From Anaeramoeba ignava BMAN (Eukaryota > Protista > Anaeramoebae), in assembly GCA_028826165.1 (NCBI GenBank), contig JAPDFW010000065.1, positions 186,001 through 250,000 on the forward strand: 64,000 nucleotides of DNA, in the 5' to 3' direction. Made by a program: the position numbers and the translations under genes. The notes beneath the pieces were generated by a model. The model had not been told where the DNA came from. It worked only from the letters and a program-made list of their open reading frames with translations, and did no database searches. Shown piece after piece: positions 8,620 through 64,000 of this stretch; position 1 is the stretch's first letter; each line of letters opens with the position of its first letter.

Positions 8620-8634
8620 AGAAAATGAGAACAG

Positions 8635-9320: not shown

Positions 9321-9699
9321 TATTTTGAAAATTGATTTTTGAAATTAAAATTTTATCTTTTTGAATTAAATTGAATTAATATTAATTTGGAAATTTGTTT
9401 TAAAATTTAAATTTATTAATAATTTTTAAATTCAAAAATTAAATTAAAAATTAAATTAAAATAATTTTCCTTTTTAATAATAAAAATTAATAAAAATAAT
9501 AATAATTTATTAATAAATTAATTTAAAATAATAAATTAAAAGAAAATTAAATTAATTATTAATTTAAATTTATTCTCATTTTTATATTTTTATTTATTTT
9601 CAAAATCCACTTTTTTTTCATTTTTTATTTAAATTTTTTTTTCATTTTTCCTTTTTAAAACAAAAAACAAAAAACAAAAAACAAAACACAAAAAACAAA

Positions 9700-11479
9700 A
9701 TGGATAATAATAATAATAATAACCAAATTCAAAATGCAAATCAAAATGAAAATCAAAATGAAAATGAAATGAAAAATTTAGAAAAAAAAGTAACAAAAAA
9801 TTTAATTAAAGATTATTCAAACCTTTTAAATGGAAATTCATTTAATGATTTTTCAATTTTTATTGAGAATAAATCAAATCCTTTCGAAATTAAAGTTCAT
9901 AAATCAATTTTATCTTCAAGATCTCCTTTTTTTAATGAATCATTAAGGCAAGAATCTCTTTCTATTTCTTTAAATCAATTTAATAAAAAAGAAATGGAAT
10001 CAATTTTGAGTTATATTTATTATGGAAATATTTCTTTTGAGAATCAAGAAAATCTTATTCAATTATTAGAAATTTCAATTTATTTTAAATTAAATTTATT
10101 GAAAAAGAAATTAAAAAAAAATTTTCAAATTCAATTAATTATTCAAATTTTTCCAATTTTTCCAAAATCGAAATTTAAATTCAAATGAAATTGAAATAAA
10201 ATGTTTTGAATTAATAAATCAAAAATTTTCCCAAATTCAAAATAATGAGAATTTATTCAATTTAACTAAAGAAGAAATTATCAAATTTATTCAATTTAAA
10301 CAAGAAAAAAAAGAAATTTTTCAATTTGATTTTTTTCAATTTTTAAATAATTGGATTAAAAAAAGAAATGAAAGATTAAAAGGAAAGAAAGAAAAAGAAA
10401 AAGAAAAGGGAATTGAAAAGAAAAGATTATTTCATTCTTTTTTTTCATTATTTGATAAAGATTCAATTTCAAAACAAGATTTTGATAAATTAAAACAATT
10501 TGATTTTTTTCCCAATTCTTTTTTAGTTGATATTCAAAACAAAGTTATTCAAGATAATCAAAAAGAAATTGAAGAGAAAGAGAAGGAAATTGAAGAGAAA
10601 TGGAAGAAAGAAGTTGAGAACAAAGAGAAAGAAAATCAACAAATGAAAATTGAAATTGAAGATAAATGGAAGAAAGAAATTGAAAACAAAGAGAAAGAAA
10701 ATCAACAAATGAAAATTGAAATTGAAGAGAAATTGAAGAAAGAAAAAAAAGAAATTGAAGAGAAATGGAAGAAAGAAGTTGAGAATAAAAACAAAGAAAT
10801 TGAAGAGAAATGGAAGAAAGAGAATGAAGATTTGAAAGAAGAGAATGAGAAAATGAAACCTGTTTTTGATGAATATGAAAAAGAATTTGAAGAAATCCAA
10901 AAGAAAATGGAACCAATCAAAAAGAATTTTCCTCAATTTTCAGAAACAAGAATTATTACAGAAGAAGAATATGTTAAGAAATTACAAGAATGGATAAATG
11001 ATAATGATTTTTTTTCTAAAATGAAAAAAGGATTTTCAGCAAAAAGAGATGGATTTAATTCTCAAAATTGGCATAAAGCAGTTGATGGGAAAGGAAAAAC
11101 ATTAGTTATTATCAAAACAAAACAAAATTTTATTTTTGGAGGTTTTACTCAAGTTGGATTTAATGGAGATACAGGATACATTAATGACTCAAATGCATTT
11201 ATTTTTTCATTAAGAAATGATAAAGGGGATAGAATACCTGCAAAATTTACTTGTAAAGAACCTCAATATTATGCGATTAATTCTTATTTAAATCATGGTC
11301 CAGATTTTGGTTATTATGATTTTCGTTTAGATTCTAATTTACAACCTGGTTATTCAAATTTTGGACGTAGTTATAATCTACCTAATGGAATTAAAGAAGG
11401 AACAGATGAAGCTAAAAGTTATTTAGCTGGTTCTCATAATTCATGGGTTGTTGATGAAGTTGAATCTTATTTCATTTAA
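9700..11479 (+). CDS. BTB/POZ + coiled-coil + TLDc domain protein, intronless (frameshift in A-run ~10120)
   Basis: BTB: FNDFSIFIENKSNPFEIKVHKSILSSRSPFF...ILSYIYYG. TLDc: FSAKRDGFNSQNWHKAVDGKGKTLVIIKT...FIFGGFT...FIFSL...GPDFG...VDEVE. Confidence 0.85.
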
Positions 11480-42500: not shown

Positions 42501-42848
42501 TTAAAATTAAAATTAAAAATAAAATAGTCAAGATTAAAGGAAATGACTGAAAAATTTGGAGAATACACTGAAACTCAAGCAATGATTGATTTTGAAGCAG
42601 TTCTTAAATCAATATCACCATTACATTTCAGAGAATTGACTTATTATGAAAAGAAAAGAATGCACAACTTGAAATATTTCACTTGGATTGAACAACAAGG
42701 AAAAACATCTGAAGAACTTAATAAACAATGGTATGATGACAACTATTGGTTAGATAGAATGAATCAATACAAACAATGGGATGAACAAATTAATCAATTT
42801 AATGAAAGAACTGGTCTTTTAAAAGATTTACTTGAAAAGAAAAAATAG
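39527..42848 (+). CDS. PLP-dependent enzyme (fold type II, cysteine synthase/TrpB-like), anaerobic-bacterial type; at least 6 introns (39639-39709, 39779-40107, 40248-40328, 40396-~40690, 40918-41655, 42180-42527)
   Basis: Spliced product ...IIIPTYEQMAHPEKIP...VGLWDINSRNLFRLTWKNEP...FPTGSHKVGA (PLP lysine)...ESNVKE...NQFAEFGNPLWHY...GSGGTLG...HQIEGIGDKHVPW...GISSIAN...TDSAQMY...HNLKYFTWIEQQGK. Exon 5 is partly corrupted. Confidence 0.85.
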
Positions 42849-43025
42849 ATTCTTTTTCTTTTTCTTTTTCAACAAATTTAATTCTTTCTTTTTTCTTTTC
42901 AATTTCAATTTCAATTTCAATTTCAATTCCAAATTCAAATTTTCTTTTTAATTTCCAAATCAAGAAAAGAAATAAATCATTTTTTTCATTTTTCATTTTT
43001 TTTCATTTTTTATAAATAAAATAAA

Positions 43026-44607
43026 ATGCAAAATCAAATTGAAATTGAAGAAAAAGAAATTGAAAAAGAAATTGAAGAAGAAAAATTAAAATGTGCAAAT
43101 TATCAATTAATTGGAAAAGAAAGTTTTATTCCAATTAATCAAAATGATTTTCAAAAATTAAAAAAATCTGAATTAATTTCAACTCCATTTAAAACAAAAA
43201 AACCATCAAATGAAATTAATTTAATATTTGAAATGTTATTTGATGAAAGTAAATAAATAAATTCATTTTCTAAAATTTTAAAATTAATTTAATAAATAAA
43301 ATAAAATAAAAAAAGTTTTATTAATAATATTAAGTTATTTATCACCTGGTGAAATTATTATATTTTCATTAACTTGTAAACAAGCTCAAATAATTTGTTC
43401 TGATTATTTTCTTTGGAAACAAATTGCAATTAAATTTCAAGATTATTTTAAATGGAATTCTTTTAGATATGATTATTACAATAATTATTACTACAATTAT
43501 CCAAATATTGATTTAAAAGCAATTCAATTTAAAATTCAAGAAAAAAATCAAAATAATCCAAATCAAAAACAAATTAAAGAACTTTCCAAAACAAATGAAA
43601 AAATCAAAAATTATTTTGATAATTCAAATTCATCAACAATCCAAACTGGAACTTATAATTATCAATCAAATTTCATTTCAATCAAAAGTGAAAGATTAAT
43701 TTATATCCAAAATCTTCAAAATCCAAAACAAAAAATTGAAAAAAAAGCTAAAATGATTTATAAAGAATTGAAAAAAGCAAAAAAAGAATTTATTCAATAT
43801 CAAAAACAACAAAATAGAATTAATTACAATTACAATCCAAATTACTCTTATTATCTTTATGGTTCAAGAAAATATTTCCTAAATAGCATTATTTTAGGAA
43901 TGAATGGAATTATTTTGATTTCAACATTAATTATATTAAATTATTTTATTGATTCAAAAAAATCAATATCAATTCCAAAATTATTTCTTTTATCAGAAAT
44001 TGATTTAATAATTACAATAATTTGGATAATTTATTCAAAATCAACTTTTTATACAACTCAAGATTATTTCAATTTTTTAAGTATAATAATTTCAGGATTT
44101 ATATTATTGATATTAATAAGTCTAAAAACAACAATAATATTCAATTTTATTCCATGGTTAATTGTTTTACTTCCTTTGATTATTTTATTCATTCATTTAA
44201 TTTCTCAATTAAATGAAGCGATAAAAAGATATCCTTATGATAAACTCCTTTATTCATCATTTATTTCATCTTTCATTTATTTAATAATTGTTCTTTTATT
44301 TACTGGATTAAAAATTGATGGATTTATTGAAATTAAATATTTAAAATTAATTTACTTATTGATTATTTTTGGAATTTATATTATTTATCATATCAAAAAT
44401 GATATTCAAAATAATGGTGCACTTATGATTTTTTTGATTTTCTTTGTTATTATTTCAATTATTATTTTGATTTTATTTCTTTATGGAGATGGAATTATCA
44501 AAAAACTTTGGATTTCTTTAATTCCAATTTATATTATTTTGACTTTTCTTTATTTTTTCTCTTTTGTTATTTTCTTTTATTCAGGATTTAAATTTATTTT
44601 CAATTAA
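43026..44607 (+). CDS. F-box + ~8-TM (TMEM185-like) protein, copy 1 (intact, 504 aa; intron 43249-43315)
   Basis: Splicing gives FEMLFDEILLIILSYLSPGEIIIFSLTCKQAQIICSDYFLWKQI (F-box). C-terminal helical hairpins with ISLK..FIPWLIVLLP, GLKIDGFI and YGDGIIKKLWISLIP. Confidence 0.8.
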
Positions 44608-44664
44608 AAAATCATTTTTCATTTTTCATTTTTTTCATTTTTCATTTTTTATAAATTAAATAAA

Positions 44665-46267
44665 ATGCAAAATCAAATTGAAATTGAAGAAAAAGAAATT
44701 GAAAAAGAAATTGAAGAAGAAAAATTAAAAAGTGTAAATTATCACTTAATTGGAAAAGAAAGTTTTATTCCAATTAATAAAAAAGATTTTCAAAAATTAA
44801 AAAAATCAGAATTAATTTCAACTCCATTTAAAACAAAAAAACCATCAAATGAAATTAATTTAATATTTGAAATGTTATTTGATGAAAGTAAATAAATAAA
44901 TTCATTTTCTAAAATTATAAAATTAATTTAATAAATTAATAAATAAAATAAAAAAAGTTTTATTAATAATATTAAGTTATTTATCACCTGGTGAAATTAT
45001 TATATTTTCATTAACTTGTAAACAAGCTCAAACAATTTGTTCTGATTATTTACTTTGGAAACAAATTGCAATTAAATTTCAAGATTATTTTAAATGGAAT
45101 TCTATTAGATATGATTATTACAATAATTATTATTATAATTATCCAAATATTGATTTAAAAGCAATTCAATTTAAAATTCAAGAAAAAAATCAAAATAATC
45201 CAAATCAAAAACAAATTGAAGAACTTTCTAAAACAAATGAAAAAATCAAAAATTATTTTGATAATTCAAATTCATCAACAATCCAAACTGGAACTTATAA
45301 TTATAAACAAAATTTCATTTCAATCAAAAGTGAAAGATTAATTTATATTCAAAATCTTAAAAATCCAAAACAAAAAATTGAAAAAAAAGCTAAAATGATT
45401 TATAAAGAAATGAAAAAAGCAAAAAAAGGATTTATTCAATATCAAAAACAACAAAATAGAATTAATTACAATTATAATTATAATTATAATTACAATCCCA
45501 ATTACAATTATTATACATATGGTTCAAGAAAATATCTATTAAATGAAGTGATAATTACAATGAATGGAATTATTTTGATTTCAACATTAATTATATTAAA
45601 TTATTTTATTGATTCAAAAAAACCAATATCAATTCCAAAATTATTTCTTTTATCAGAAATTGATTTAATAATTACAATATTTTGGGTTATTTATTCAAAA
45701 TCTAATTTTTATTCACTTCAAGAATATTTCAATTTTTTAAGTATAATAATTTCAGGATTTATATTATTGATATTAATAAGTCTAAAAACAACAATAATAT
45801 TCAATTTTATTCCATGGTTAATTGTTTTACTTCCTTCAATTATTCTATTTATTCATTTCATTTCTCAACTAAATCAACAGATAAAAATATATCCTTATGA
45901 AAAACTTCTTTATTCATCATTTATTTCATCTTTAATTTATTTAATAATTGTTCTTTTATTTACTGGATTAAAAATTGATGGATTTATTGAAATTAAATAT
46001 TTAAAATTGATTTATTTATTGATTATTTTTGAAATTTATATTCTTTATTCTATCAAAAAAGAGCTTCGAAATTTTTGTGATTTTATTGGTTTCTTGATTT
46101 TCTTTGTTTCTGTTTCAATTAGTTTTTTGATTTTATTTCTTTATGGAGATGGAATTATCAAAAAACTTTGGATTTCTTTAATTCCATTTTATATTATTTT
46201 GGCTTATCTTTATTTTTTCTCTTTTATTATCTTTTTTACATCAGGATTTAAATTTATTTTCAATTAA
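44665..46267 (+). CDS. F-box + TM protein, copy 2 (intact; intron 44888-44957)
   Basis: Same two-exon structure; spliced length 1533 nt, in frame. Confidence 0.8.
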
Positions 46268-46319
46268 AAAAAATCATTTTTCATTTTTCATTTTTTTTCA
46301 TTTTTATAAATAAAATAAA

Positions 46320-47872
46320 ATGCAAAATCAAATTGAAATTGAAGAAAAAGAAATTGAAAAAGAAATTGAAGAAGAAAAATTAAAATGTGCAGATTATCAA
46401 TTAATTGGAAAAGAAAGCTTTATTCCAATTAATAAAAACGATTTTCAAAAATTAAAAAAATCAGAATTAATTTCAACTCCATTTAAAACAAAAAAACCAT
46501 CAAATGAAATTAATTTAATATTTGAAATGTTATTTGATGAAAGTAAATAAATAAATTCATTTTCTATTTAAATTATAAAATTAATAAATAAAATAAAATA
46601 AAAAGTTTTATTAATAATATTAAGTTATTTATCACCTGGTGAAATTATTTTATTTTCATTAACTTGTAAACAAGCTCAAATGATTTGTTCTGATTATTTT
46701 CTTTGGAAACAAATTGCAATTAAATTTCAAGATCATTTTAAATGGAATTCTATTAGATATGATTATTACAATAATTATTACTACAATTATCCAAATATTG
46801 ATTTAAAAGCAATTCAATTTAAAATTCAAGAAAAAAATCAAAATAATCCAAATCAAAAACAAATTGAAGAACTTTCTAAAACAAATGAAAAAATCAAAAA
46901 TTATTTTGATAATTCAAATTCAACAACAATCCAAACTGGAACTTATAATTATAAACAAAATTTCATTTCAATCAAAAGTGAAAGATTAATTTATATTCAA
47001 AATCTTAAAAATCCAAAACAAAAAATTGAAAACAAAGCTAAAATGATTTATAAAGAAATGAAAAAAGCAAAAAAAGGATTTATTCAATATCAAAAACAAC
47101 AAAATAGAATTAATTACAATTACAATCCAAATTACAATCATCCATATTCAAATTATCTATTAAATGATATTATCGTTTCAATGAATGGAATTATTTTAAT
47201 TTCAACATTAATTATATTAAATTATTTTATTGATTCAAAAAAATCAATATCAATTCCAAAATTATTTCTTTTATCAGAATTTGATTTAATTATTATAATA
47301 ATTTGGATAATTTATTCAAAATCTAATTTTTATACAACTCAAGAATATTTCAATTTTTTAAGTATAATAATTTCAGGATTTATATTATTGATATTAATAA
47401 GTCTAAAAACAACAATAATATTCAATTTTATTCCATGGTTAATTGTTTTACTTCCTCCAATTATTGTGTTAATTTCTTTCATTTCTCAATTAAATCAAGA
47501 AATTCGAAAATATCCTTATAATAAAAGCTTTTTTATTTTTTTATCTTCGGTTTTTGGATATTTAATAATTACTCTTTTCTTTATTGGATTAAAACTTGAT
47601 GAATTTATTGAAATCAAATATTCAAAATTAATTTATTTATTGATTATTTTTCAAATTTATATTCTTTTTATTTTAATGAAAAAAAATTCAAACCCGTGAT
47701 TTTATTTTCTATTATTTTGATTATTTTTGATTTTTATTCCTTTATGGAGATGGAATTATCAAAAACTTTGGATTTCTTTTAATTCCAATTTATATTATTT
47801 TTATTTTTTCTTTTTATTTTTCATTTGTTATCAATTTTTTTTACATCAGGATTTAAATTTTTGAGAAATTAA
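46320..47872 (+). CDS. F-box + TM protein, copy 3 (frameshifted near 3' end ~47690)
   Basis: Same structure; ORF ends at 47699 but homologous sequence continues to ~47872. Confidence 0.7.
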
Positions 47873-47935
47873 ATAAAAAATCATTTTTCATTTTTCATTT
47901 TTTTCTTTTTTTTCATTTTTTATAAATAAAATAAA

Positions 47936-49528
47936 ATGCAAAATCAAATTGAAATTAAAGAAAAAGAAATTGAAAAAGAAATTGAAGAAGAAAAATTAAA
48001 ATGTGCAAATTATCAATTAATTGGAAAAGAAAGCTTTATTCCAATTAATCAAAAAGATTTTCAAAAATTAAAAAAATCTGAATTAATTTCAACTCCATTT
48101 AAAACAAAAAAACTAACAAATGAAATTAATTTAATATTTGAAATGTTATTTGATGAAAGTAAATAAATAAATTCATTTTTAAATTTTAAAATTATAAAAT
48201 TAATTTAATAAAATAAATAAAAAGTTTTATTAATAATATTAAGTTATTTATCACCTGGTGAAATTATTTTATTTTCATTAACTTGTAAACAAGCTGAATA
48301 TATTTGTTCTGATTATTTTCTTTGGAAACAAATTGCAATTAAATTTCAAGATTATTTTAAATGGAATTTTGTTTTTTATGATTATTACGATGATTACTAC
48401 TATTATAATTATTATGATAATCCAAATATTCAATTAAAAGCAAATCAATTTAAAATTCAAGAAAAAAATCAAAATAATCCAAATCAAAAACAAATTAAAG
48501 AACTTTCTAAAACAAATAAAAAAATCAAAAATTATTTTGATAATTCAAATTCAACAACAATCCAAACAGGACTTTATGATTACAAAGCAAATTTCATTTC
48601 AATCAAAAGTGAAAGATTAATTTATATTCAAAATCTTCAAAATCCAAAACAAAAAATTGAAAAAAAAGCTAAAATGATTTATAAAGAAATAAAAAAAGCA
48701 AAAAAAGAAATTATTAAATATGAAAATCATCAAAAAAAATATCAAGTGAATTCTTTGAATTTTTCATATAATTCAAGAAAATATTTCTTAAATGATATTA
48801 TTGTCTCAATACTTGGAATTATCTTACTTTCAACATTTTTTATATTAAATTATTATATTGATTCAAAAAAATCAATATCAATTCCAAAATTATTTCTTTT
48901 ATCAGAAATTGATTTAATTATTACAATAATTTGGATAATTTATTTAAAACCAACTTTTTATACGCTTCAAGAATATTTCAATTTATTATATTTAACAATT
49001 TCTGGATTAATATTATTGATATTAATAAGTTTGAAAACAATATTCAATTTTATTCCATGGTTAATTGTTTTACTTCCTCCAATTATTTTATTTATTTATT
49101 TTCTTCCTCAACTAAATCAACAGATAAAAAGATATCCTTATGATTACAATATTTTGATCACATTAATTTCATCTTTAATTTATTTAATAATTGTTCTTTT
49201 CTTTATTGGATTTAAACTTGATGGATTTATTGAAATCAAATATTCAAAATTAACTTATTTATTGATTATTATTGAAATTGCTGTTATTTATGATATCAAA
49301 AAAGAAATATTAAATTGGAAAAAATTATTGGGAATTATTATTCTTTTTTTGATTTTTTTGATTATTTTTTTGATGATATTTCTTTATGCAGATGGAATTA
49401 TCAAAAAACTTTGGTTTTCTTTGCTTATAGCTTATCCTCTTTTGGTTTTTTTTGAACTTTTGTTTATTGTTATTTTCTTTACTTCAGGATTTAAATTAAT
49501 TCAGAAAATAATTAAAAATGAAAATTAA
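47936..49528 (+). CDS. F-box + TM protein, copy 4 (intact; intron 48159-48224)
   Basis: Spliced length 1527 nt, in frame. Confidence 0.8.
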
Positions 49529-49573
49529 AAATTCATTTTTTTCATTTTTTTCATTTTTTATAAATAAAATAAA

Positions 49574-51127
49574 ATGCAAAATCAAATTGAAATTGAAGAA
49601 AAAGAAATTGAAAAAGAAATTGAAGAAGAAAAATTAAAATGTGCAAATTATCAAATAATTAGAAAAGAAAGTTATATTCCAATTTATCAAAAAGATTTTC
49701 AAAAATTAAAAAAATCTGAATTAATTAAAACTTCATTTAAAACAAAAAAACCAACAAATGAAATTAATTTAATATTTGAAATGTTATTTGATGAAAGTAA
49801 ATAAATAAATTCATTTTCTATTTAAATTATAAAATTAATTTTAATAAATTAAAAATAAAATAAAGTTTTATTAATAATATTAAGTTATTTATCACCTGGT
49901 GAAATTATTATATTTTCATTAACTTGTAAACAAGCTGAATATATTTGTTCTGATTATTTTCTTTGGAAACAAATTGCAATTAAATTTCAAGATTATTTTA
50001 AATGGGATTCTGTTTATTATTATTCTTATTATAATTATCCAAATATTGAATTAAAAGCAATTCAATTTAAAATTCAAGAAAAAAATCAAAATAATCCAAA
50101 ACAAAAACAAATTAAAGAACTTTCTAAAACAAATGAAAAAATCAAAAATTATTTTGATAATTCAAATTCAACAATAATAAAAACAGGAACTTATAATTAT
50201 AAACCAAATTTCATTTCAATCAAAAGTGAAAGATTAATTTATATTCAAAATCTTCAAAATCCAAAACAAGAAATTGAAAAAAAAGCTAAAATGATTTTTA
50301 AAAAATTGAAAAAAGCAAAAGAAGAATTTAATTATTCAAAAACAATCAACTTATATAAATATGATTCAAGAAAATATTTCTTAAATGATGTTATTTATAC
50401 AATGAATCGGATTATTTTAATTTCAACATTAATTATATTAAATTATTATATTGATTCAAAAAAATCAATATCAATTCCAAAATTATTTCTTTTATCAGAA
50501 TTTGATTTAATTATTACAATAATTTGGGTTATTTATTCAAAACATAATTTTTCTTACAAAGAAGATTATTCCTTGTTTCTAAGAATTTTAATTACAGGAC
50601 TTACATTATTGATATTAATAAGTTTGAGAACACTATTCAATTTTATTCCATGGTTAATTGTTTTACTTCCTCCAATTATTTTCTTGATTTCTTTAATTCC
50701 TGATATTTTTGAAGAAATTGAAAAATATTATCATGAAAAAAACTTCATGATAATTTTCTTTACTCATACAGTATTTTTGATGATTGTTATTTTATTTATT
50801 GGATTGAAATTTGATGGATTTATTGAAATCAAATATTCAAAATTGTTGTACTTAATGATAATTGATATAATTTTAGTTTTAATTAGGAACATTAAAGAAT
50901 TTTTTCCTTTTAGTGATTATTTTTATGATAATTTTGGTGAATTTATTGGTTTTTTCTTGATATCATTTTATCCTCTTTTGATCTTATCATTATTATTTCT
51001 TTATGGAGATGGAATTATCAAAAAACTTTGGATTTCTTTAATTCCAACTTATATTTTTTTATTAAGTGTTTTGATTTTCTCTTTTATTAATTTTTTCAAA
51101 TCAGGATTTAAATTAATTTTTAAATAA
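49574..51127 (+). CDS. F-box + TM protein, copy 5 (intact; intron 49797-49865)
   Basis: Spliced length 1485 nt, in frame. Confidence 0.8.
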
Positions 51128-51202
51128 AAATTTTTTTTCATTTTTTTCTTTTCTTTTCTTTTTTTTTCTTTTATCTTTTTTTAAAAAAAAAAAGTTCTTA
51201 AA

Positions 51203-52800
51203 ATGAAAAATCATTTTGAAATTAATGAAGATGAAATTAAACAAATTGAATTTAAAGATAAAATTGAAAAAGAAATTAAAGAAGAACAATTAAAAAGTGC
51301 AAATTATCAATTATTTGGGAAAGAAAGTTATGTTCCAATTAAATATGAACATTTAGAAAGATTAAAAAAATCTGAATTAATTTCAACTCCAATTAAAACA
51401 AGAAAACCATCAAATGAAATTAATTTAATATTTGAAATGTTATTTGATGAAAGTAAATAAATAAATTCATTTTTTAAATTTAAAATTATAAAATTAATTT
51501 TAATAAATAAAATAAAAAGTTTTATTAATAATATTAAGTTATTTATCACCTGGTGAAATTATTATGTTTTCATTAACTTGTAAACAAGCTCAAATAATTT
51601 GTTCTGATAATTTTCTTTGGAAACAAATTGCAATTAAATTTTCAAGATTATTTTAAATGGAATTTTGTTTTTTTTCATTTAAGACAAACATTTAGTGTTG
51701 ATATTTCAACTTTTTCAACTTTTGAATTAAACGGTGTTCAATTTAAAATTCAAGAAAAAAATCAAAATAATCCAAAACAAAAACAAATTGAAGAACTTTC
51801 CAAAACAAATAAAAAAATCAAAAATTATTTTGATAATTCAAATTCAACAACAATCAAAACAGGAAATTATATTTATCAAGCAAATCCCATTTCAATCAAA
51901 AGTGAAAGAATAATTTATATTCAAAATCTTAAAAATCCAAAACAAAAAATTGAAAAAAAAGCTAAAATGATTTATAAAGAATATAAAGATATAAAAGAAA
52001 AAATTAGAGTCTCACAAAAATATGAAACTTATCCACCAAAAACCCAAAAAAGATATTTAATAGGAGAATTGATTTTCTTATCGAATTTCTTGATTTTTGT
52101 GATATCGTTTGTGATTTTGAATTATTATATTGATTCAAAAAAAGAAATACCAATTTTCAAATTATTTCTTTTGGAAGAAATTAGTTTAATTTTTGGAATA
52201 TTTGCGATTATTGATGGAAAATCAACTTTTTTTTCATCTCAAGAATATTTCAATTTCATAAGATTTGAAATTTATCTATTGATATCAATGATATTAATAA
52301 GCTTGAAAATAACAGGAAAAATTGGTTTTATTCCTTGGGTTATTGTTTTACTTTTTCCAGTTCTTTTATTAATCTCTTACTATTCTCAAGTTTTGGATTT
52401 TTCAAAGAAGAAAATTCATGAAAAAACCATTTTCATTTCAGCATCTTTTAGGTTTGATTTACATTATAATTATCATTTTATTTACTGGATTGAAACTTGA
52501 TGGATTGATCCCAATCAAATATTTTAATTTGAATTACTTCTTGATTTTTCTTTTTATTCACTTGATTGCAAACAAAAATGAATTTTTGACTAAAGATGAT
52601 TTTGGAGGCGTAACTTTTTATTATTTCCTTTTTGGATTGATTTTCATGTTGTTATTTTTTTACGCAGATGGAAGCATTAAAACTTTATGGAGAGCTTTAA
52701 TTCCCTTTATTTAATTCTCTTTTTATTTTTTATTATAGCATTTATTGCTTTTATTCGTTCTTCATTTAAATTGATTAAGAAAATAATTACAAATCAATAA
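51203..52800 (+). CDS. F-box + TM protein, copy 6 (most divergent; several 1-nt frameshifts)
   Basis: Longer N-terminus (MKNHFEINEDEIK...), same intron and F-box, divergent TM domain; frameshifts ~51640, ~52450 and ~52710. Confidence 0.7.
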
Positions 52801-52857
52801 ATTCCAAAAAAAAATTCATTTTTCATTTTTTTTCATTTTTTTTTAAATTAAAATAAA

Positions 52858-54476
52858 ATGCAAAATCAAATTGAAATTGAAGAAAAAGAAATTGAAAAAG
52901 AAATTAAAGAAGAAAAATTAAAAAGTGAAAATTATAGAATAATTAGAAATCAAAGCTTTATTCCAATTTATAAAAAAGATTTAGAAAAATTAAAAAAATC
53001 TGAATTTAATTATTGAAACTCCATTTAAAACAAAAAAACCATCAAATGAAATTAATTTAATATTTGAAATGTTATTTGATGAAAGTAAATAAATTCATTT
53101 TAAATTTAAAATTATAAAATTAATTAAATAAAATAAAATAAAAAGTTTTATTAATAATATTAAGTTATTTATCACCTGGTGAAATTATTATGTTTTCTTT
53201 GACTTGTAAACAAGCTCAATATATTTGTTCTGATTATTTACTTTGGAAACAAATTGCAATTAAATTTCAAGATTATTTTAAATGGAATTCTTTTTATTTT
53301 GATTATTATTCTTCAACTATTAAATTAAAAGCAATTCAATTTAAAATTCAAAAAAAAAATCAAAATAATCCAAAACAAAAACAAATTAAAGAACTTTCTA
53401 AAACAAATGAAAAAATCAAAAATTATTTTGATAATTCAAATTCAACAATAATCCAAATTGGACCTTATTCTTATGATTATAAAGCAAATTTCATTTCAAT
53501 TAAAAGTGAAAGAATAATTTATATTCAAAATATTAAAAATCCAAAACAAGAAATTGAAAAAAAAGGGAAAATGATTTTTGAACGTTTTAGAAAAGCAAAA
53601 CAAAGAAAAATTGCCAAAGAAAGATATCAAAAAAAATATTACAATCCAAATTATGATATAAAGACTTTTGGCACTGGAAGACGTTGTTTTTTTGGATCAA
53701 GAATTGATTTTTTAACTCAATTTGTTTATACAATGAATGGAATGATTTTATCTACAACACTTATTATATTGAATATTTACATTGATTCAAAAAAAGAAAT
53801 ACCAATTTTCAAATTATTTCTTTTGGGGGAAATTAGTTTAATTTTTGGAATATTTTGGGTTTTGCATTCAAAATCAAGTTTCTATTCACTTCAAGATTAT
53901 TACAATTTATTAAGAAGTGGTATTACTGGATTGATATTTATGATAATAATAAGTTTGAAAACAACAAAGACATTCAGTTTTATTCCATGGTTAATTATCT
54001 TACTTCCTCCAATTATTTTGTTAAGTTCTTTCCTTTATCAATTTATTGAATTCACAAAACAATATCCATTACGAAGAGATTACTTCATTTTATTAAGTTT
54101 TATGAATGCTTATTTGATCACTGCTCTTTTATTTACTGGATTCAAACTTGATGGATTTATCCAAATCAAATATTCAAAATTGATTTATTTATTCTTTCTT
54201 TTTATTATAGCCTTCTTTGCTAAATTCACAAAACAGATTTTTACTCAAGATTTTTATTTTATTTCTTTTTTCTTTATTGGTTTTTTCATCATTATTTTAT
54301 CAATTCTATTTTTCTATGGAGATGGTCTTGTAGATAGACTATATTTTGCTTTAGTTCCAATTTATACAATTTTATTTATTCCCTATTTAAATTTAGTTTT
54401 GATGGGAATTTTTTTGATTATTTCTTCAGGATTTGAATTTTTTAAATTAATTTTCAAATTTAATAATGAAAATTAA
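52858..54476 (+). CDS. F-box + TM protein, copy 7 (frameshift in exon 1 ~53005)
   Basis: ATG at 52858; exon 2 open through 54476 (428-aa ORF). Confidence 0.72.
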
Positions 54477-54511
54477 AAATTCATTTTTTTTCATAAATAA
54501 AATAAAATAAA

Positions 54512-56070
54512 ATGCAAAATCAAATTGAAATTAAAGAAAAAGAAATTGAAAAAGAAATTGAAGAAGAAAAATTAAAATGTGCAAATTATAAATTAATTGG
54601 AAAAGAAAGTTATATTCCAATTAATCAAAAAGATTTTCAAAAATTAAAAAAATCTGAATTAATTTCAACTCCATTTAAAACAAAAAAACCATTAAATGAA
54701 ATTAATTTAATATTTGAAATGTTATTTAATGAAAGTAAATAAATAAATTCATTTTTTATTTAAATTTAAATTATAATTTTAATAAATAAAATAAAAAAAG
54801 TTTTATTAATAATATTAAGTTATTTATCACCTGGTGAAATTATTATATTTTCATTAACTTGTAAACAAGCTCAAATGATTTGTTCTGATTATTTACTTTG
54901 GAAACAAATTGCAATTAAATTTCAAGATTATTTTAAATGGGATTCTTTTTTTTACGATTATAATTATTATAATTATCCAAATATTGAATTAAAAGCAATT
55001 CAATTTAAAATTCAAGAAAAAAATCAAAATAATCCAAATCAAAAACAAATTAAAGAACTTTCCAAAACAAATGAAAAAATCAAAAATTATTTTGATAATT
55101 CAAATTCAACAACACAAATGGGAATTTATAATTATAAACAAAATTTCATTTCAATTAAAAGTGAAAGATTAATTTATATTCAAAATCTCCAAAATCCAAA
55201 ACAAAAAATTGAAAAAAAAGCTAAAATGATTTATAAAGAAATGAAAAAGCAAAACAACAATATATTTATTCTCAAAAAAGTAAAATCAATCACAATTATT
55301 CTCACTATCAATATGGTTCAAGAAAATATTTATTAAATGAAATTATCTTAGGAATGAATGGAATTGTTTTGATTTCAACATTAATTATATTAAATATTTA
55401 TATTGATTTAAAAAAATCAATATCAATTCCAAAATTATTTCTTTTATCAGAACTTGATTTAATAATTACAATATTTTGGATAATTTATTCAAAATTGAAT
55501 TTTTATTCATTTCAAGAATATTATCTTTTATTAAATTTAATAATTACTGGATTAATATTAATGATATTAATAAGTTTGAAAACAATATTCATATTCAATT
55601 TTATTCCATGGTTAATTATTTTAATTCCTCCAATTATTTTCTTAATATATCTCATTTCTTACATTTATCAACTTATTCAACAGATAGCAGGATATTCAAA
55701 AGACGAGATAGTTTATTTAATGTTTATTTTAGGTTTAATTTATTTAATAATTGTTCTTTTATTTACTGGATTGAAACTTGATGAATTTATTGAAATTAAA
55801 TATTCAAAATTGATTTATTTATTGATTATTTTTGAAATTTATATTCTTTATCATATGAAAAAAGAAATTGGAACTTTTTGTCAATTTATTGGAATGTTGC
55901 TTTTTTTTGTTGTTATTTTGATTATTTTATTGAGGATATTTCTTTATGGAGATGGAATTATCCAAAAACTTTTTCGTGCTTTATTTTTGATTTATACCAT
56001 TTTATTTATTCCTTTTTTGTTATCTTTTGCTATTTTCTTTTCATCAGGATTTAAATTGATTTTCAATTAA
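54512..56070 (+). CDS. F-box + TM protein, copy 8 (frameshift in A-run ~55245)
   Basis: ORFs 54512, 54875 and 55354 join into one gene. Confidence 0.72.
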
Positions 56071-56171
56071 AAATGATGATCAAGATGATGGTTATTATGT
56101 TTATTAAAAAATGTAATGCAAAAAAAAATAATTTTTCATTTCATTTTTTTTCATAAATAAAATAAAATAAA

Positions 56172-57726
56172 ATGCAAAATCAAATTGAAATTGAAGAAAA
56201 AGAAATTGAAAAAGAAATTGAAGAAGAAAAATTAAAATGTGCAAATTATAAATTAATCAGGAAAGAAAGCTTTATTCCAATTAATCAAAAAGATTTTCAA
56301 AAATTAAAAAAATCTGAATTAATTTCAACTCCATTTAAAACAAAAAAACCAACAAATGAAATTAATTTAATATTTGAAATGTTATTTAATGAAAGTAAAT
56401 AAATAAATTCATTTTTTATTTAAAATTTAAAATTAATTTAATAAAATAAATAAAAAAAGTTTTATTAATAATATTAAGTTATTTATCACCTGGTGAAATT
56501 ATTATATTTTCATTAACTTGTAAACAAGCTCAAATAATTTGTTCTGATTATTTACTTTGGAAACAAATTGCAATTAAATTTCAAGATTATTTTAAATGGA
56601 ATTCTGTTTTTTTTGATTATTCTTATTATAATTATCCAAATATTGAATTAAAAGCAATTCAATTCAAAATTCAAGAAAAAAATCGAAATAATCCAAATCA
56701 AAAACAAATTAAAGAACTTTCTAAAACAAATGAAAAAACCAAAAATTATTTTGATAATTCAAAACAACAACAATCAAAACAGGAACTTATAATTATCAAC
56801 CAAATTTCATTTCAATCAAAAGTGAAAGATTAATTTATATTCAAAATCTTCAAAATCCAAAACAAAAAATTGAAAAAAAAGCTAAAATGATTTATAAAGA
56901 AATGAAAAAAGCAAAAAAAGGATTTATTCGATATCAAAAACAACAAAATCTCAATTACAATTATTCTCACTATCAATATGATTCAAAAAAATATTTATTA
57001 AATGAAGTTATCTTAGGAATGAATGGAATTATTTTGATTTCAACATTAATTATATTAAATATTTATATTGATTCAAAAAAATCAATATCAATTCCAAAAT
57101 TATTTCTTTTATCAGAACTTGATTTAATAATTACAATATTTTGGATAATTTATTCAAAATTCACTTTTTATTCATTTCAAGATTATCATAATTATTTAGA
57201 TATAGCAATTACTGGATTTATATTTATGATATTAATAAGTTTGAAAACTTTATTCAATTTTATTCCATGGTTAATTATTTTAATTCCTCCAATTATTTTA
57301 TTCATTTCTTTAATTCCTCAAATTATGGAACAAATGAAAAGATATTCTGATGATAAACCAATTTTTTCATCATTCATTTCAGGTTTAATTTATTTAATAA
57401 TTATTCTTTTCTTTATTGGATTAAAACTTGATGGATTTATTCAAATCAAATATTCAAAATTAATTTATTTATTGATTATTTTTGAAATTTATATTCTTTA
57501 TTCTAAAAAAAATGAGTTTCAAAATCAAGATGATTTTATCGGTTCTTTGATTTTATTTGTTTCTGTTTCGATTATTATTTTGATTTTATTTCTTTATGGA
57601 GATGGAATTATCAAAAAACTTTGGATTTCTTTAATTCCAATTTATATTATTTTGACTTTGATTTTTTTTTTTTTTCTTTTATTATTTTCTTTTTCTTTCA
57701 TTTAATTTAATTTTATTTTCAATTAA
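56172..57726 (+). CDS. F-box + TM protein, copy 9 (frameshifts ~56765 and at 3' end)
   Basis: Same two-exon structure. Confidence 0.7.
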
Positions 57727-57780
57727 AAATCATTTTAAAATTTTTCATTTTTCATTTTTCATTTTTTTAAATAAAATAAA

Positions 57781-59320
57781 ATGCAAAATCAAATTGAAAT
57801 TGAAGAAAAAGAAATTGAAAAAGAAATTGAAGAAGAAAAATTAAAATGTGCAAATTATAAATTAATTGGAAAAGAAAGCTTTATTCCAATTAATCAAAAA
57901 GATTTTCAAAAATTAAAAAAATCAGAATTAATTTCAACTCCATTTAAAACAAGAAAACCATCAAATGAAATTAATTTAATATTTGAAATGTTATTTGATG
58001 AAAGTAAATAAATAAATTCATTTTATATTTAAATTTAAAATTAATTTAATAAATAAAATAAAAAGTTTTATTAATAATATTAAGTTATTTATCACCTGGT
58101 GAAATTATTTTATTCTCATTAACTTGTAAACAAGCTCAAATGATTTGTTCTGATTATTTTCTTTGGAAACAAATTGCAATTAAATTTCAAGATTATTTTA
58201 AATGGGATTTTGTTTTTTTTGATTATTATTACTATAACTATCCAAATATTGAATTAAAAGGAATTCAATTCAAAATTCAAGAAAAAAATCAAAATAATCC
58301 AAATCAAAAACAAATTGAAGAACTTTCCAAAACAAATGAAAAAATCAAAAATTATTTTAATAATTCAAAAACAACAACAATCAAAACAGGAACTTATCAT
58401 TATCAACCAAATTTCATTTCAATCAAAAGTGAAAGAATAATTTATATTCAAAATCTTCAAAATCCAAAACAAAAAATTGAAAACAAAGCTAAAATGATTT
58501 ATAAAGAATTGAAAAAAGCAAAACAAAAATACATGAGAACACAAAAAAATGATCAATCCAATCTTTTATCCAATAAATACGCTCATGGCTCAACAAAATA
58601 TTTGATATCTGAAGTGATTTTAGTAATGAATGTGGTTATTTTGATTACAACATTAATTATATTAAATATTTATATTGATTCAAAAAAATCAATATCAATT
58701 CCAAAATTATTTCTTTTATCAAAAATTGATTTAATAATTACAATAATTTGGATAATTTATTCAAAATCAACTTTTAGTTCTGAAAAGAAATATTACAATT
58801 TATTACTTATTCCAGTTTCTTTATTTATATTTATGATATTAATAAGCTTGAAAACAAGATTCAATTTTATTCCATGGTTAATTGTTTTACTTCCTTTGAT
58901 TGTTTTATTCATTTCTTTAATTTCTCAATTAAATCGTGCTTTAAAAAATTATTCAATGAGTAGGCCATTACAAATGTTTTTAATTTATATTTTTGGATAT
59001 TTTGTAATTGTTCTTTTCTTTATTGGATTGAAACTTGATGGATTTATTCAAATCAAATATTCAAAATTGATTTATTTATTTATTTTTGATTTAATAATTT
59101 TCTTTATCAATTCTTCAAAAGAATTCTCTTTTTATGAAAATTTAAGAATGTTTTTAGTTGTAAGTTTTGTTTTGATTCTTCAATTATTAATGTTATTTCT
59201 TTATGGAGATGGAATTATCAAAAACTTGGAAGTGGATTTGTTTATTTTGTATTTATAATTCTATTTTTCCATTATTTTTTATTTCGATTTTTGTTTATTT
59301 TCAGGATTTGATTTTAATTA
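57781..59320 (+). CDS. F-box + TM protein, copy 10 (frameshift near 3' end ~59225)
   Basis: Intron 58004-58065; open through most of the TM domain. Confidence 0.72.
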
Positions 59321-59382
59321 AAAATTAGAAGTAAAAATTAAATTTTTTTTTTCATTTTTTTCATTTTTATAAATTAAATAAA

Positions 59383-60798
59383 ATGCAAAATCAAATTGAA
59401 ATTAATGAAAAAGAAATTGAAAAAGAAATTGAAGAAGAAAAATTAAAATGTGCAAATTATAAATTAATTGGGAACGAAAGTTATATTCCAATTAATCAAA
59501 AAGATTTTCAAAAATTAAAAAAATCAAATTTAATTTCAACTCCAATTAAAACAAGAAAACCAACAAATGAAATTAATTTAATATTTGAAATGTTATTTGA
59601 TGAAAGTAAATATAAAATTTTACTATCAATTTTAAATTGAAATTAATTTAAAAAATTTATAAAAAGTTTTATTAATAATATTAAGTTATTTATCACCTGG
59701 AGAAATTATTTTATTTTCTTTAACTTGTAAACAAGCTCAATATATTTGTTCTGATTATCTTCTTTGGAAACAAATTGCAATTAAATTTCAAGATTATTTT
59801 AAATGGAATTCTGTTTTTTTTGATTATTCTTATTATAATTACTCAAATATTGAATTAAAAGGAATTCAATTTAAAATTCAAGAAAAAAATCAAAATGATC
59901 CAAAACAAAAACAAATTAAAGAACTTTCTAAAACAAATGAAAAAATCAAAAATTATTTTGATAATTCAAAACAATTAAAACAGGAACTTATTCTTATCAA
60001 CAAAATTTCATTTCAATCAAAAGTGAAAGAATAATTTATATTCAAAATCTTAAAAATCCAAAACAAGAAATTGAAAAAAGGAAAATGATTTTAAAGAAAT
60101 GAAAAGCAAAAAGAAATTAAATGAAAAACAAAAAACAAAAACAATTCTTATCAATGAATGGAATTATTTTGATTACAACATTAATTATATTGAATTATTT
60201 ATATTGATTTAAAAAAATCAATATCAATTCCAAAATTATTTCTTTTATCAGAAATTGATTTAATAATTACAATATTTTGGATAATTTATTCAAAATTAAC
60301 TTTTTATTCATTTCAAATATATTTCAATTTGATTACTGGATTGATATTTATGATAATGATAAGTTTGAAAACTTTATTCAATTTTATTCCTTGGTTAATT
60401 GTTTTACTTCCTTTAATTATTTTATTCATTTATTTCATTTATCAAATTAATTTTTTTTCACCATTTATTTCATCTTTTTAATTTTTTAATATTTGTTCTT
60501 TTATTTACTGGATTGAAACTTGATGGATTGATTCAAATCAAATATTCAAAATTGATTTATTTATTGATTATTTTTGAAATTTATATTCTTTATTCTAACA
60601 AAAATGATATTCAAATTTTTGGTGATTTTATTGGTTCTTTGATTTTCTTGGTTATTATTTTAATTATTATTTTGATTTTATTTCTTTATGGAGATGGAAT
60701 TATCAAAAAACTTTGGATTTCTTTTGATTCCAATTTATATTATTTTATTTATTCCTTATTTTTTTTTTCTCATTTCAGGATTTAAATTTATTCAATAA
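59383..60798 (+). pseudogene. F-box + TM protein, copy 11 (internal deletions and multiple frameshifts; pseudogene or collapsed consensus)
   Basis: About 150-200 nt shorter than the others; variable segments deleted at ~60120-60150, ~60320 and ~60450. Confidence 0.55.
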
Positions 60799-60845
60799 AA
60801 AATTAAAATTTTTCATTTTTCATTTTTCATTTTTTATGTTTAAAA

Positions 60846-62333
60846 ATGCAAAATCAAATTGAAATTGAAGAAAAAGAAATTGAAAAAGAAATTGAAGAAG
60901 AAAAATTAAAATGTGCAAATTATAAAATAATTAGAAATGAAAGTTATATTCCAATTAACAAAAAGATTTAGAAAAATTGAAAAAATCAAATTTAATTTTC
61001 AACACCATTTAAAACAAAAAAACCATCAAATGAAATTAATTTAATATTTGAAATGTTATTTGATGAAAGTAAATATAAAATTTTATTTTTCAATTTTAAA
61101 TTGAAATTAATTTAAAAAATTTATAAATAGTTTTATTAATAATATTAAGTTATTTATCACCTGGAGAAATTATTTTATTTTCTTTAACTTGTAAACAAGC
61201 TCGAATATATTTGTTCTGATTATCTTCTTTGGAAACAAATTGCAATTAAATTTCAAGATTATTTTAGATGGAATTCTGTTTTTGATTATTATTCTTATCA
61301 TAATTATCCAAATATTGATTTAAAAGGAATTCAATTTAAAATTCAAGAAAAAAATCAAAATAATCCAAAACAAAAACAAATTAAAGAACTTTCTAAAACA
61401 AATGAAAAAATCAAAAATTATTTTGATAATTCAAATTCAACAACAATTAAAACAGGAACTTATAATTATCAACCAAATTTCATTTCAATCAAAAGTGAAA
61501 GAATAATTTATATTGAAAATCTTGAAAATCCAAAACAAGAAATTGAAAAAAAAGGGAAAATGATTTTTAAAGAATTAAAAAAGCAAAAGAAAAATTTATT
61601 TATATCAAAAAAAAGAATCAAAATCCCAATTACAATGGAATTATTTTGATTACAACATTAATTATATTTAATTATTATATTGATTCAAAAAAATCAATAT
61701 CAATTCCCAAATTATTTCTTTTATCAGAAATTGATTTAATAATTACAATATTTTGGATTATTTATTCAAAATTAACTTTTTATTCCTTTCAAGATTATTC
61801 TATCTTTTTAAGTTTAACAATTAATGGATTGATATTTATAATAATGATAAGCTTGAAAACATGATTCAATTTTATTCCTTGGTTAATTATTTTACTTCCT
61901 CCAATTATTTTATTCATTTATTTCATTTATCAATTTATCAAACAAATGAAAAAAAATATTTTATGATAAAATCATTTTTTCATCATTTATTTCAGGTTTA
62001 ATTTACTTAATGATTGTTCTTTTCTTTATTGGATTGAAACTTGATGGGTTTATTCAAATCAAATATTCAAAATTAATTTATTTATTGATTATTTTTGAAA
62101 TTTATATTCTTTATCATATTTGGAAAGAAATTCGAATTTTTGTTGATTTTATTGTTTTTTTGGTTTTATTGGTTATTATTTTAATTGTTTTTTTGATTTT
62201 ATTTCTTTATGGAGATGGAATTATCAAAAAACTTTGGATTTCTTTAATTCCAATTTATATTCTTTTAGCTTATCCATTATTTTTCTCATTTGCTATTTTC
62301 TTTTCATCAGGATTTAAATTTATTTTCAATTAA
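60846..62333 (+). pseudogene. F-box + TM protein, copy 12 (multiple frameshifts)
   Basis: ATG at 60846; homologous throughout but broken into several short ORFs. Confidence 0.55.
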
Positions 62334-62383
62334 AAAATCATTTTTCATTTTTCATTTTTCATTTTATATTTTTTAATTTTTTT

Positions 62384-63974
62384 TTGCAAAATCAAATTGA
62401 AATTAAAATGAAAAATCAAAATTGAAAAAGAAATTGAAAAAGAAATTGAAGAAGAAAAATTAAAATGTGCAAATTATAAATTAATTGGAAATGAAAGTTA
62501 TATTCCAATTAATCAAAAAGATTTTCAAAAATTAAAAAAATCAAATTTAATTGAAACACCATTTAAAACAAAAAAACCATCAAATGAAATTAATTTAATA
62601 TTTGAAATGTTATTTGATGAAAGTAAATAAATAAATTCATTTTATATTAAAAATTTAAAATAAAATTAATTTAAAAAATAAAATAAAAAGTTTTATTAAT
62701 AATATTAAGTTATTTATCACCTGGTGAAATTATTTTATTTTCTTTAACTTGTAAACAAGCTCAAATGATTTGTTCTGATTATTTTCTTTGGAAACAAATT
62801 GCAATTAAATTTCAAGATTATTTTAGTTGGAATTCTGTTTTTTGATTATTATTATAATTATCCAAATATTGAATTAAAAGCAATTCAATTTAAAATTCAA
62901 GAAAAAAATCAAAATGATCCAAAACAAAAACAAATTAAAGAACTTTCTAAAACAAATGAAAAAATCAAAAATTATTTTGATAATTCAAATTCAACAACAA
63001 TCAAAACAGGAACTTATAATTATCAACCAAATTTCATTTCAATCAAAAGTGAAAGAATAATTTATATTCAAAATCTCCAAAATCCAAAACAAGAAATTGA
63101 AAACAAAGGAAAATGATTTATAAAGAAATGAAAAAAGTAAAAGAAGAATTTACTTATTCACAAAAAAGAATTAATTATGATTGGGGATCAAAAAGATATT
63201 TATTAACGCAATTCATTGCTACAATGAATGGAATTATTTTAATTTCAACATTAATTATATTAAATATTTATATTGATTCAAAAAAATCAATATCAATTCC
63301 AAAATTATTTCTTTTATCAGAACTTGATTTAATAATTACAATATTTTGGATTATTTATTCAAAATTCACCTTTTATTCATTTCAAGAATATTTACATACT
63401 TTTAAAAATTACAATTACTGGATTAACATTATTAATATTAATAAGTTTAAAAACAATGAAGATATTTAATTTTATTCCATGGTTAATTATTTTACTTCCT
63501 CCAATTATTTTATTAATTTCTTTAATTTATCAACTTCTCAAAGAACTAAAAAGGGTTTTTTATGATAGAATTGTTTTCATTGTTTTTATTTTATCTTTAA
63601 TTTATTTAATAATTACTTTTTTCTTTATTGGATTAAAACTTGATGGATTTATTCAAATCAAATATTCAAAATTGATTTATTTATTGATTATTTTTGAAAT
63701 TTATATTCTTTATCATATTTGGAAAGAAATTCGAACTTTTGGAGAATTTTTCGCATTTATAATAGTTTCTTTGGTTATTTTCATTATTTTATTAATGCTA
63801 TTTCTTTATGGAGATGGAATTATCAAAAAGCTTAGAATTGCTTTAATTCCAACTTATCTTCTTTTATCGATTCCTTATTTTTTCTCATTTATTTTTTTCT
63901 TTTATTCAGGATTTAAATTGATTTTGAAAATAATTAAAAATGATGATCAAGATGATGGTTATTATGATTATTAA
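62384..63974 (+). CDS. F-box + TM protein, copy 13 (start region and several runs frameshifted)
   Basis: TTGCAAAATCAAATTGAA in place of ATGCAAAAT...; same intron and F-box; ends KNDDQDDGYYDY*. Confidence 0.6.
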
Positions 63975-64000
63975 AAAATGTAATGCAAAAAAAAATAATT

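What the first reader, a model, noticed from the sequence alone, without database searches (positions are those of the whole stretch)
43026..64000. Tandem array of 13 F-box + multi-pass membrane proteins: candidate family of membrane-embedded SCF ubiquitin-ligase adaptors
Seen: 13 head-to-tail ~1.6-kb units fill the last 21 kb and may continue past the window. The ORF track shows only a 76-aa ORF plus a TM ORF per unit. A conserved phase-1 GT-AG intron (e.g. 43249-43315) joins them and reveals an F-box split by the intron: LFDE|ILLIILSYLSPGEIIIFSLTCKQAQIICSDYFLWK. The C-terminal ~250 aa form four helical hairpins with turn motifs (IDSKKSISIPK, ISLK..FIPWL, GLKLDGFI.IKY, YGDGIIKKLW) resembling TMEM185/TMEM60/TMEM203 repeats. 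Known: F-boxes bind Skp1 to recruit substrates to Cul1 ligases and are usually fused to soluble domains (WD40, LRR, Kelch). Inference: an integral-membrane F-box family, amplified in tandem, that tethers SCF to an organelle, phagosome or symbiont-containing membrane to ubiquitinate membrane or foreign proteins.
Basis: partly seen in the sequence, partly recalled or inferred. Interest (0 to 1): 0.9.

Follow-up and report, generated by a model that had tools for sequence, protein, structure and literature searches.

The report
Membrane-embedded F-box gene array in amoeba
An anaerobic amoeba (Anaeramoeba ignava) carries a run of 15 genes, part of a family of about 60, that join the F-box (the part that plugs into SCF protein-destruction machines) to an eight-helix membrane domain; several other protist lineages have the same pairing, for which I found no published description.

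Summary
This is Anaeramoeba ignava. Thirteen units lie in the window and two beyond it. Exon 2 alone passes Pfam's F-box cut-offs, and the phase-1 intron is shared across the family and with A. flamelloides. The membrane domain is a diverged Tmemb_185A: array copies miss Pfam, but paralogs pass and the family profile matches at 99%.

Corrections:
- Only 4 of the 13 copies (plus unit 15) are unbroken in this nanopore assembly.
- The array is one part of a family of about 60 loci, 57 of the genome's 124 F-box matches.
- The fusion is not unique: it occurs in Dictyostelium, Mastigamoeba, Thecamonas (both orders) and Gefionella.
- All 15 copies replace the Cul1-contacting F-box proline with Phe; nearly all paralogs keep it.
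- Divergence concentrates on the predicted cytosolic half of the membrane domain.

Tmemb_185A is also fused to RING and J-domains, and human TMEM185A/B bind CHIP. Best reading: membrane-embedded SCF substrate receptors (0.55). Skp1 binding, expression, location and any symbiont role are untested. The scan noted this family before elsewhere in this genome.

The parts
43026..44607 (+). Unit 1, intact: exon 1 43026-43248, intron 43249-43315, exon 2 43316-44607 (504 aa in NCBI's model)
43249..43315 (+). Phase-1 GT-AG intron that splits the F-box after its L-F-D-E motif; same position in all units, in dispersed paralogs and in A. flamelloides
43231..43431 (+). F-box of unit 1 across the intron; conserved Pro replaced by Phe (codon TTT) in all 15 units
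44665..46267 (+). Unit 2, intact; intron 44888-44957
46320..47880 (+). Unit 3; intron 46543-46605; frame open to 47699, broken near 47690-47840; end approximate
47936..49528 (+). Unit 4, intact; intron 48159-48224
49574..51127 (+). Unit 5, intact; intron 49797-49865; exon 2 used for the structure models
50366..51121 (+). Eight-helix (four-hairpin) Tmemb_185A-like membrane domain of unit 5, exon-2 residues 167-418
51203..52800 (+). Unit 6, divergent; intron 51453-51519; three single-base frameshifts near 51640, 52440, 52707; end approximate
52858..54476 (+). Unit 7; intron 53085-53145; exon 2 fully open (442 aa), exon 1 has a +1 base near 53005
54512..56070 (+). Unit 8; intron 54735-54800; one -1 frameshift in an A run near 55245
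56172..57705 (+). Unit 9; intron 56395-56459; -1 frameshift near 56763
57781..59320 (+). Unit 10; intron 58004-58065; open to 59258, -1 in an A run near 59220; end approximate
59383..60800 (+). Unit 11; intron 59606-59666; six frameshifts and a stalk region about 70 nt shorter
60846..62333 (+). Unit 12; intron 61069-61130; three frameshifts in exon 2, an in-frame TGA near 61864, shortened stalk region
62385..63974 (+). Unit 13; start garbled, intron 62623-62690; three frameshifts. Units 14 (broken) and 15 (intact) follow beyond the window

Best explanation
Each unit encodes an integral membrane F-box protein: a short N-terminal segment, an F-box, a linker and a long basic stalk helix in the cytosol, followed by an eight-helix Tmemb_185A-type domain. 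The family most likely works as membrane-embedded substrate receptors for SCF. The F-box binds the single detected Skp1 and so Cul1-Rbx1; the membrane domain fixes the complex in an endomembrane and picks membrane-protein substrates on its cytosolic half; these are ubiquitinated for removal. The array is a recent tandem expansion of one diverged subfamily in which the F-box, linker and far-side turns stay nearly uniform while the stalk end and cytosol-side half of the membrane domain differ strongly between copies, as expected of a receptor set with different specificities. Shown here: gene structure, domains, predicted fold, family size, phylogenetic spread, pattern of divergence. Inferred: topology, Skp1 and Cul1 binding, substrate recognition by the membrane domain, compartment.
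For: F-box above Pfam cut-offs from exon 2 alone; the modelled F-box superposes on Fbw7's in Skp1 complexes at 1.3 A over 40 residues, though with weak E-values. F-box and Tmemb_185A both above cut-off in one exon in five paralogs; family profile against TMEM185-type proteins 99.3%, 235 columns. Skp1 and Cul1-like genes are present. The same fusion occurs in Amoebozoa, Apusozoa (once in reverse order) and Malawimonada, and more weakly in Paratrimastix and Lapot. Among 97 more distant hits, 91 carry Tmemb_185A, 32 a J-domain and 12 an F-box-like domain. Plant PPRT1 is Tmemb_185A + RING (PMC6358930), and human TMEM185A/B co-precipitate with the ligase CHIP (10.1101/2023.07.17.549407). Tree length per codon among copies: F-box + linker 0.86, far half 2.0, near half 6.7; omega for exon 2 is 0.55-0.67.
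Against: All 15 copies have Phe for the F-box proline; Pro-to-Ala in Skp2 and Fbxo4 markedly reduced Cul1 binding (PMC3237615). Ten of 15 copies are broken in the assembly. No transcript-derived record of an array copy was found, and no reads could be laid. Omega in the membrane domain is 0.74-0.82, so constraint is weak. Synonymous sites also diverge more in the variable half, so positive selection is not shown. The positive-inside test on internal loops was inconclusive. No complex with Skp1 was modelled.
Confidence: 0.55

Rival explanations
1. The family at large are SCF receptors, but this Pro-less array binds Skp1 with little or no Cul1. It acts as a cullin-free Skp1 complex in membrane traffic (as yeast Rcy1 does, from my own knowledge), or as a decoy or self-stabilised variant that binds substrates or Skp1 without ubiquitinating.
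For: Phe is fixed for the conserved Pro in 15 of 15 copies while nearly all of about 45 other homologs keep Pro; the Pro contacts Cul1 and its loss cuts Cul1 binding (PMC3237615). The array sits on a very long stem (3.55 changes per column) and has also lost family motifs of hairpins 1 and 3.
Against: The rest of the F-box is the most conserved part of the array (94% identity) and passes Pfam cut-offs. The Dictyostelium F-box list of PMC9485057 includes Pro-less sequences, among them the Skp1-associated JcdI, so loss of Pro does not exclude Skp1 binding; the effect of Phe on Cul1 is untested.
Confidence: 0.22
2. The array is a birth-and-death cluster that is mostly decaying; only a few copies, or none, do useful work, and the variable patches reflect relaxed constraint plus uneven gene conversion.
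For: 10 of 15 copies carry frameshifts; U11 and U12 lack about 70 nt of the stalk region; U12 has an in-frame stop. Omega is near 0.8 in the membrane domain. No transcript record was found.
Against: About 30 frameshifts against 1-2 stops, many of them single bases in A or T runs, in an assembly built from nanopore reads (10.1101/2023.03.03.530753) where repeats polish badly. Second-codon-position divergence in the near half (0.29) exceeds intron divergence (0.09), which uniform decay does not give. Copies only 58-70% identical keep full open frames.
Confidence: 0.13
3. The membrane domain has its own job (ion or lipid handling, as reported for TMEM203 in calcium homeostasis), and the F-box only controls the protein's own turnover or placement.
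For: TMEM203, a Tmemb_185A protein, was described as a regulator of intracellular calcium (cited in PMC4815072); many homologs have no extra domain.
Against: No convincing channel or transporter fold match; members are only about 20-25% identical with no conserved polar core, only turn motifs; a family of about 60 with one variable face fits binding diversity better.
Confidence: 0.1

Closest known systems
SCF substrate receptors (FBXW, FBXL, FBXO)
   Same: N-terminal F-box, linker, C-terminal variable domain; tandem lineage-specific expansion as in plants and nematodes (own knowledge)
   Different: The C-terminal domain is an eight-helix integral membrane bundle, not WD40, LRR or Kelch; array copies lack the Cul1-contacting proline
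Tmemb_185A family (PF10269: human TMEM185A/B, TMEM60, TMEM203)
   Same: Repeated helix-turn-helix hairpins with the L-K-L-D...W..VF.P turn; all four hairpins align; TMEM185A/B bind the U-box ligase CHIP
   Different: The human proteins have no F-box; array copies are too diverged to hit Pfam directly and have lost some turn residues
Arabidopsis PPRT1 (At1g68820; Tmemb_185A + RING; PMC6358930)
   Same: Same membrane domain fused to a ubiquitin-ligase module
   Different: RING at the C-terminus (a stand-alone E3) rather than an N-terminal F-box (adaptor for a cullin ligase); small family
Uncharacterised protist F-box + Tmemb_185A proteins (Dictyostelium purpureum EGC31634, Mastigamoeba balamuthi m51a1_g7738, Thecamonas AMSG_06972 and AMSG_09632, Gefionella, Paratrimastix PAPYR_3107)
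   Same: Same two-domain architecture, with a basic stalk helix between the domains
   Different: One or two found per species in my sample, F-box proline kept, intron position differs in Dictyostelium and is absent in Thecamonas; one Thecamonas gene has the domains reversed
Lipid-anchored F-box proteins (FBXL2, FBXL20, FBXO10, yeast Rcy1, Legionella AnkB) and membrane adaptors of ligases (Vpu, TMEM127); own knowledge, not tested
   Same: Bring a ubiquitin ligase or Skp1 to a membrane
   Different: They use prenylation or a separate polypeptide; none has the F-box and a multi-pass domain in one chain

Membership tests
F-box proteins (SCF receptors) | F-box domain above curated threshold | tested here: met
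   PF12937 24.8-26.9 bits (cut-off 24.3) and PF00646 22-25.4 (20.5) from exon 2 alone, 6 of 6 copies
F-box proteins (SCF receptors) | Three-helix F-box fold | tested here: met
   pLDDT 95-97 over residues 1-40; 1.3 A over 40 residues to Fbw7, Foldseek prob 0.99-1.0 but E 1.2-1.9
F-box proteins (SCF receptors) | Conserved proline at the start of helix 1 (Cul1 contact) | tested here: not met
   Phe in 15 of 15 array copies; Pro in nearly all paralogs
F-box proteins (SCF receptors) | Binds Skp1 and assembles with Cul1 | not testable with these tools
   Partners are encoded; no multimer prediction or binding data
F-box proteins (SCF receptors) | Recruits a substrate for ubiquitination | not testable with these tools
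   No substrate known
Tmemb_185A (PF10269) | Direct Pfam match of array copies | tested here: not met
   No hit even at E 10; array-only profile against TMEM185-type profile gave probability 30%
Tmemb_185A (PF10269) | Homology through paralogs and family profile | tested here: met
   Paralogs score up to 45.8 bits, cut-off 23.1; family profile 99.3%; ten of ten best Atlas hits with a family are Tmemb_185A, at low score 0.75
Tmemb_185A (PF10269) | Repeated membrane hairpins | tested here: met
   Eight long helices in both models; seven hydropathy peaks in U5, helix 1 being more polar
Expressed spliced genes | Intron removed in RNA | not testable with these tools
Diversifying receptor arrays | Positive selection on the binding face | tested here: inconclusive
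   Near half diverges about three times faster than far half, but omega is below 1 in every partition and synonymous sites diverge too; no site model run

The most novel reading that the evidence does not exclude
The Tmemb_185A fold is an ancient membrane-embedded substrate-selection module that is coupled again and again to protein quality control (F-box, RING, J-domain, CHIP). F-box fusions of it form an undescribed class of integral-membrane cullin-ligase receptors in protists, and Anaeramoeba has expanded them into a variable receptor repertoire, near half of its F-box genes, that polices phagosome or symbiosome membranes.
Probability: 0.15. Interest if true: 0.85.

Novelty: new variant of a known kind. 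Interest (0 to 1): 0.6.

Why it matters
F-box receptors known to me reach membranes by lipid anchors or partner proteins; an F-box in one chain with a multi-pass domain would give SCF direct access to membrane substrates, a job usually done by RING ligases. My paper searches found no description of this class (open-access library only). The repeated pairing of Tmemb_185A with F-box, RING, J-domain and CHIP also gives a testable function for the human orphans TMEM185A/B, TMEM60 and TMEM203, and a counterpart exists in a Dictyostelium species, a genus with genetics and a Skp1 interactome.

Tried and rejected
No places were named as human-like; later database searches still used units 5, 7, 10 and 15 instead of 43000-49000 (rows from that stretch remained in local scripts and in one profile comparison). 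One Pfam scan used NCBI's full-length records by id; no conclusion depends on it. Exon 1 has no Pfam match and no word-index homologue. Fold searches gave no significant solved relative of the membrane domain (best Z 9.3, heme A synthase, 207 aligned, rmsd 4.3; within background for helical bundles). The tree of membrane domains is unresolved at depth, so one versus several origins of the fusion is open. Nei-Gojobori dN/dS near 1 was set aside as biased by 17% G+C; codon models gave lower values. Rejected: chance ORFs or non-coding repeat (domains, fold, homologs); 'unique to Anaeramoeba'; GPCR-like fold (TM-scores at most 0.34). Schmidt 2009 could not be read; it is cited through PMC3237615.
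Full report
Source and observation. The exon-2 protein of unit 1 is identical to an Anaeramoeba ignava record named 'f-box only protein'; the window is bases 186001-250000 of a 527-kb contig. Thirteen units start between 43026 and about 62385, and two more follow the window end; the next gene is Vps33-like by my reading of its translation. Every unit has a GT-AG intron at one phase-1 position; the 13 in the window are 61-70 nt long, with lengths in all three frames, while exon 1 is 223 nt in 10 of 13 units. The same intron, directly after the L-P-x-E motif, is present in dispersed paralogs at about 55-640 nt and in A. flamelloides at 3768 nt. NCBI's models use this splice. RNA reads could not be obtained, so splicing is inferred, strongly, not shown. 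I searched exon by exon and left out any joined model of my own.

Domains. Exon 2 alone passes the curated cut-offs for F-box-like and F-box in all six copies tested. AlphaFold on exon 2 of unit 5 (84-row alignment, pLDDT 88) gives three F-box helices, a small linker with short strands, a 33-residue stalk helix and eight long helices in four hairpins; the membrane part folded alone agrees (pLDDT 89.5). Array copies do not hit Tmemb_185A directly. The link is made through paralogs, five of which carry both domains above cut-off in one exon, and through the family profile, which aligns with TMEM185-type proteins over 235 columns at 99.3%. No solved structure matches the membrane domain.

State of the copies. 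Units 1, 2, 4, 5 and 15 are fully open; unit 7 has an open exon 2 and one extra base in exon 1; the others have one to six frameshifts. About 30 frameshifts stand against one or two stops, and many are single bases in A or T runs. The assembly came from nanopore reads polished with short reads (10.1101/2023.03.03.530753). I put about 60% on most breaks being assembly errors; units 11 and 12, with about 70 nt missing in the stalk region, may be real pseudogenes.

Family size. A profile search of the genome gives about 60-65 loci on some 25 contigs by my count of coordinates, including other tandem runs of about 9, 7 and 3. Of 124 F-box-like matches in the genome, 57 coincide with these loci; the other 67 were not classified. 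The genome gave one Skp1 match and several cullins, of which the one tested is closest to Cul1.

Spread. A profile search of 1.84 billion representatives returned, after the Anaeramoeba members, F-box + Tmemb_185A proteins from Mastigamoeba, Thecamonas, Gefionella and four unnamed assemblies with both domains above cut-off. Dictyostelium purpureum has it too; its annotation starts inside the F-box, and the upstream frame holds the missing L-P-D-E part. Paratrimastix falls just under the F-box cut-off, and Lapot has the F-box but matches the membrane domain only with my local profile. A second Thecamonas gene has the domains reversed. None of the F-box fusions I could name came from animals, fungi or plants, but only the best 150 hits were seen. 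The amoebozoan proteins form a supported group; deeper branches are unresolved, and the array sits on a long stem among Anaeramoeba members.

Context of the membrane domain. Among 97 more distant hits, 91 carry Tmemb_185A, 32 a J-domain and 12 an F-box-like domain; the query favours such hits, so these are not family-wide proportions. [quoted passage not shown] Four kinds of coupling to ubiquitin or chaperone machinery suggest, by inference, that the domain is a membrane platform for protein quality control.

What is special about this array. All 15 copies read L-F-D-E or L-F-N-E where nearly all other homologs read L-P-x-E. That proline contacts Cul1, and mutating it in Skp2 or Fbxo4 markedly reduced Cul1 binding (PMC3237615). 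Pro-less F-boxes can still associate with Skp1 (JcdI in PMC9485057). Among eight copies, amino-acid identity is 94% in the F-box, 85% in the four turns on the far side and 39% in the loops on the F-box side. Tree length per codon is 0.86 for F-box + linker, 2.0 for the far half and 6.7 for the near half. Second-position divergence in the near half (0.29) exceeds that of the intron (0.09), but fourfold sites there also diverge more (0.21 against 0.03), nearest neighbours change along the gene, and omega is 0.55-0.67 over exon 2 and below 1 in each part. This fits patchy gene conversion around old variable segments; positive selection is not shown. Calling the near half cytosolic rests on the N-terminal F-box, the absence of an N-terminal hydrophobic segment and a basic stalk (7.7 K+R in 24 residues); the internal loops gave no clear charge bias.

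Mechanism. Most likely (0.55) these are membrane-embedded SCF substrate receptors with variable specificity. For this array a cullin-poor Skp1 complex or decoy is a serious rival (0.22); a mostly decaying cluster (0.13) and an independent membrane function with a self-regulating F-box (0.10) are less likely. A role at the symbiosome is possible, since phagosome-maturation trafficking families are expanded in this genus, but nothing here tests it.

Novelty. Paper searches found no account of F-box + Tmemb_185A proteins or of integral-membrane F-box proteins; the Dictyostelium F-box survey names no membrane domain, and I saw no counterpart in the part of its list that I read. The library is open-access only. 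The proteins are in public databases under automatic names. I rate it a new variant of a known kind, interest 0.6. Earlier first-stage notes of this scan saw the same family at other places in this genome; they are not independent evidence.

Noticed in passing
P0049, P0069 and others: J-domain + Tmemb_185A fusions are common among distant hits (32 of 97), including the fungus Linnemannia; a parallel chaperone-recruiting version of the same membrane domain.
   Followed up: partly
P0048, Thecamonas AMSG_09632: Tmemb_185A first, F-box second: reversed order, suggesting a separate fusion or a rearrangement.
   Followed up: partly
window 40700-42848 (+): Multi-exon gene just upstream of the array with a weak cysteine-synthase (cysK) match, E 1.6e-10, interrupted by long introns of simple AT-rich repeats; possibly of bacterial origin, untested.
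   Followed up: partly
L041, about window coordinate 67400 onward: The gene that follows unit 15 reads as Vps33 (Sec1 family) by my recognition of its translation; not searched.
   Followed up: no
G000 C98:219-228 kb and C76:25-32 kb, 126-133 kb: Further tandem runs of F-box genes with 400-540 aa frames and probably the same intron position; some may be a second membrane-type subfamily (P0051, P0092, P0100). Not fetched.
   Followed up: no
window 32297-37539 (-): Large ankyrin-repeat + RhoGEF + PH gene.
   Followed up: partly
window 22845-24842 (+): Phosphoglucomutase-family protein with an N-terminal hydrophobic segment; another note of the scan remarks on its catalytic site, which I did not check.
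   Followed up: no
window 6808-11479 (+): RCC1-BTB-like and BTB-TLDc-like genes by eye, typical of the expanded ligase-adaptor families in this genome; not searched.
   Followed up: no
G000 C57:231-240 kb: Two adjacent Cul1-like genes, apparently a tandem duplicate.
   Followed up: partly
L070 (Dictyostelium purpureum EGC31634): The public model starts inside the F-box; the open frame upstream holds the missing start of the domain.
   Followed up: yes
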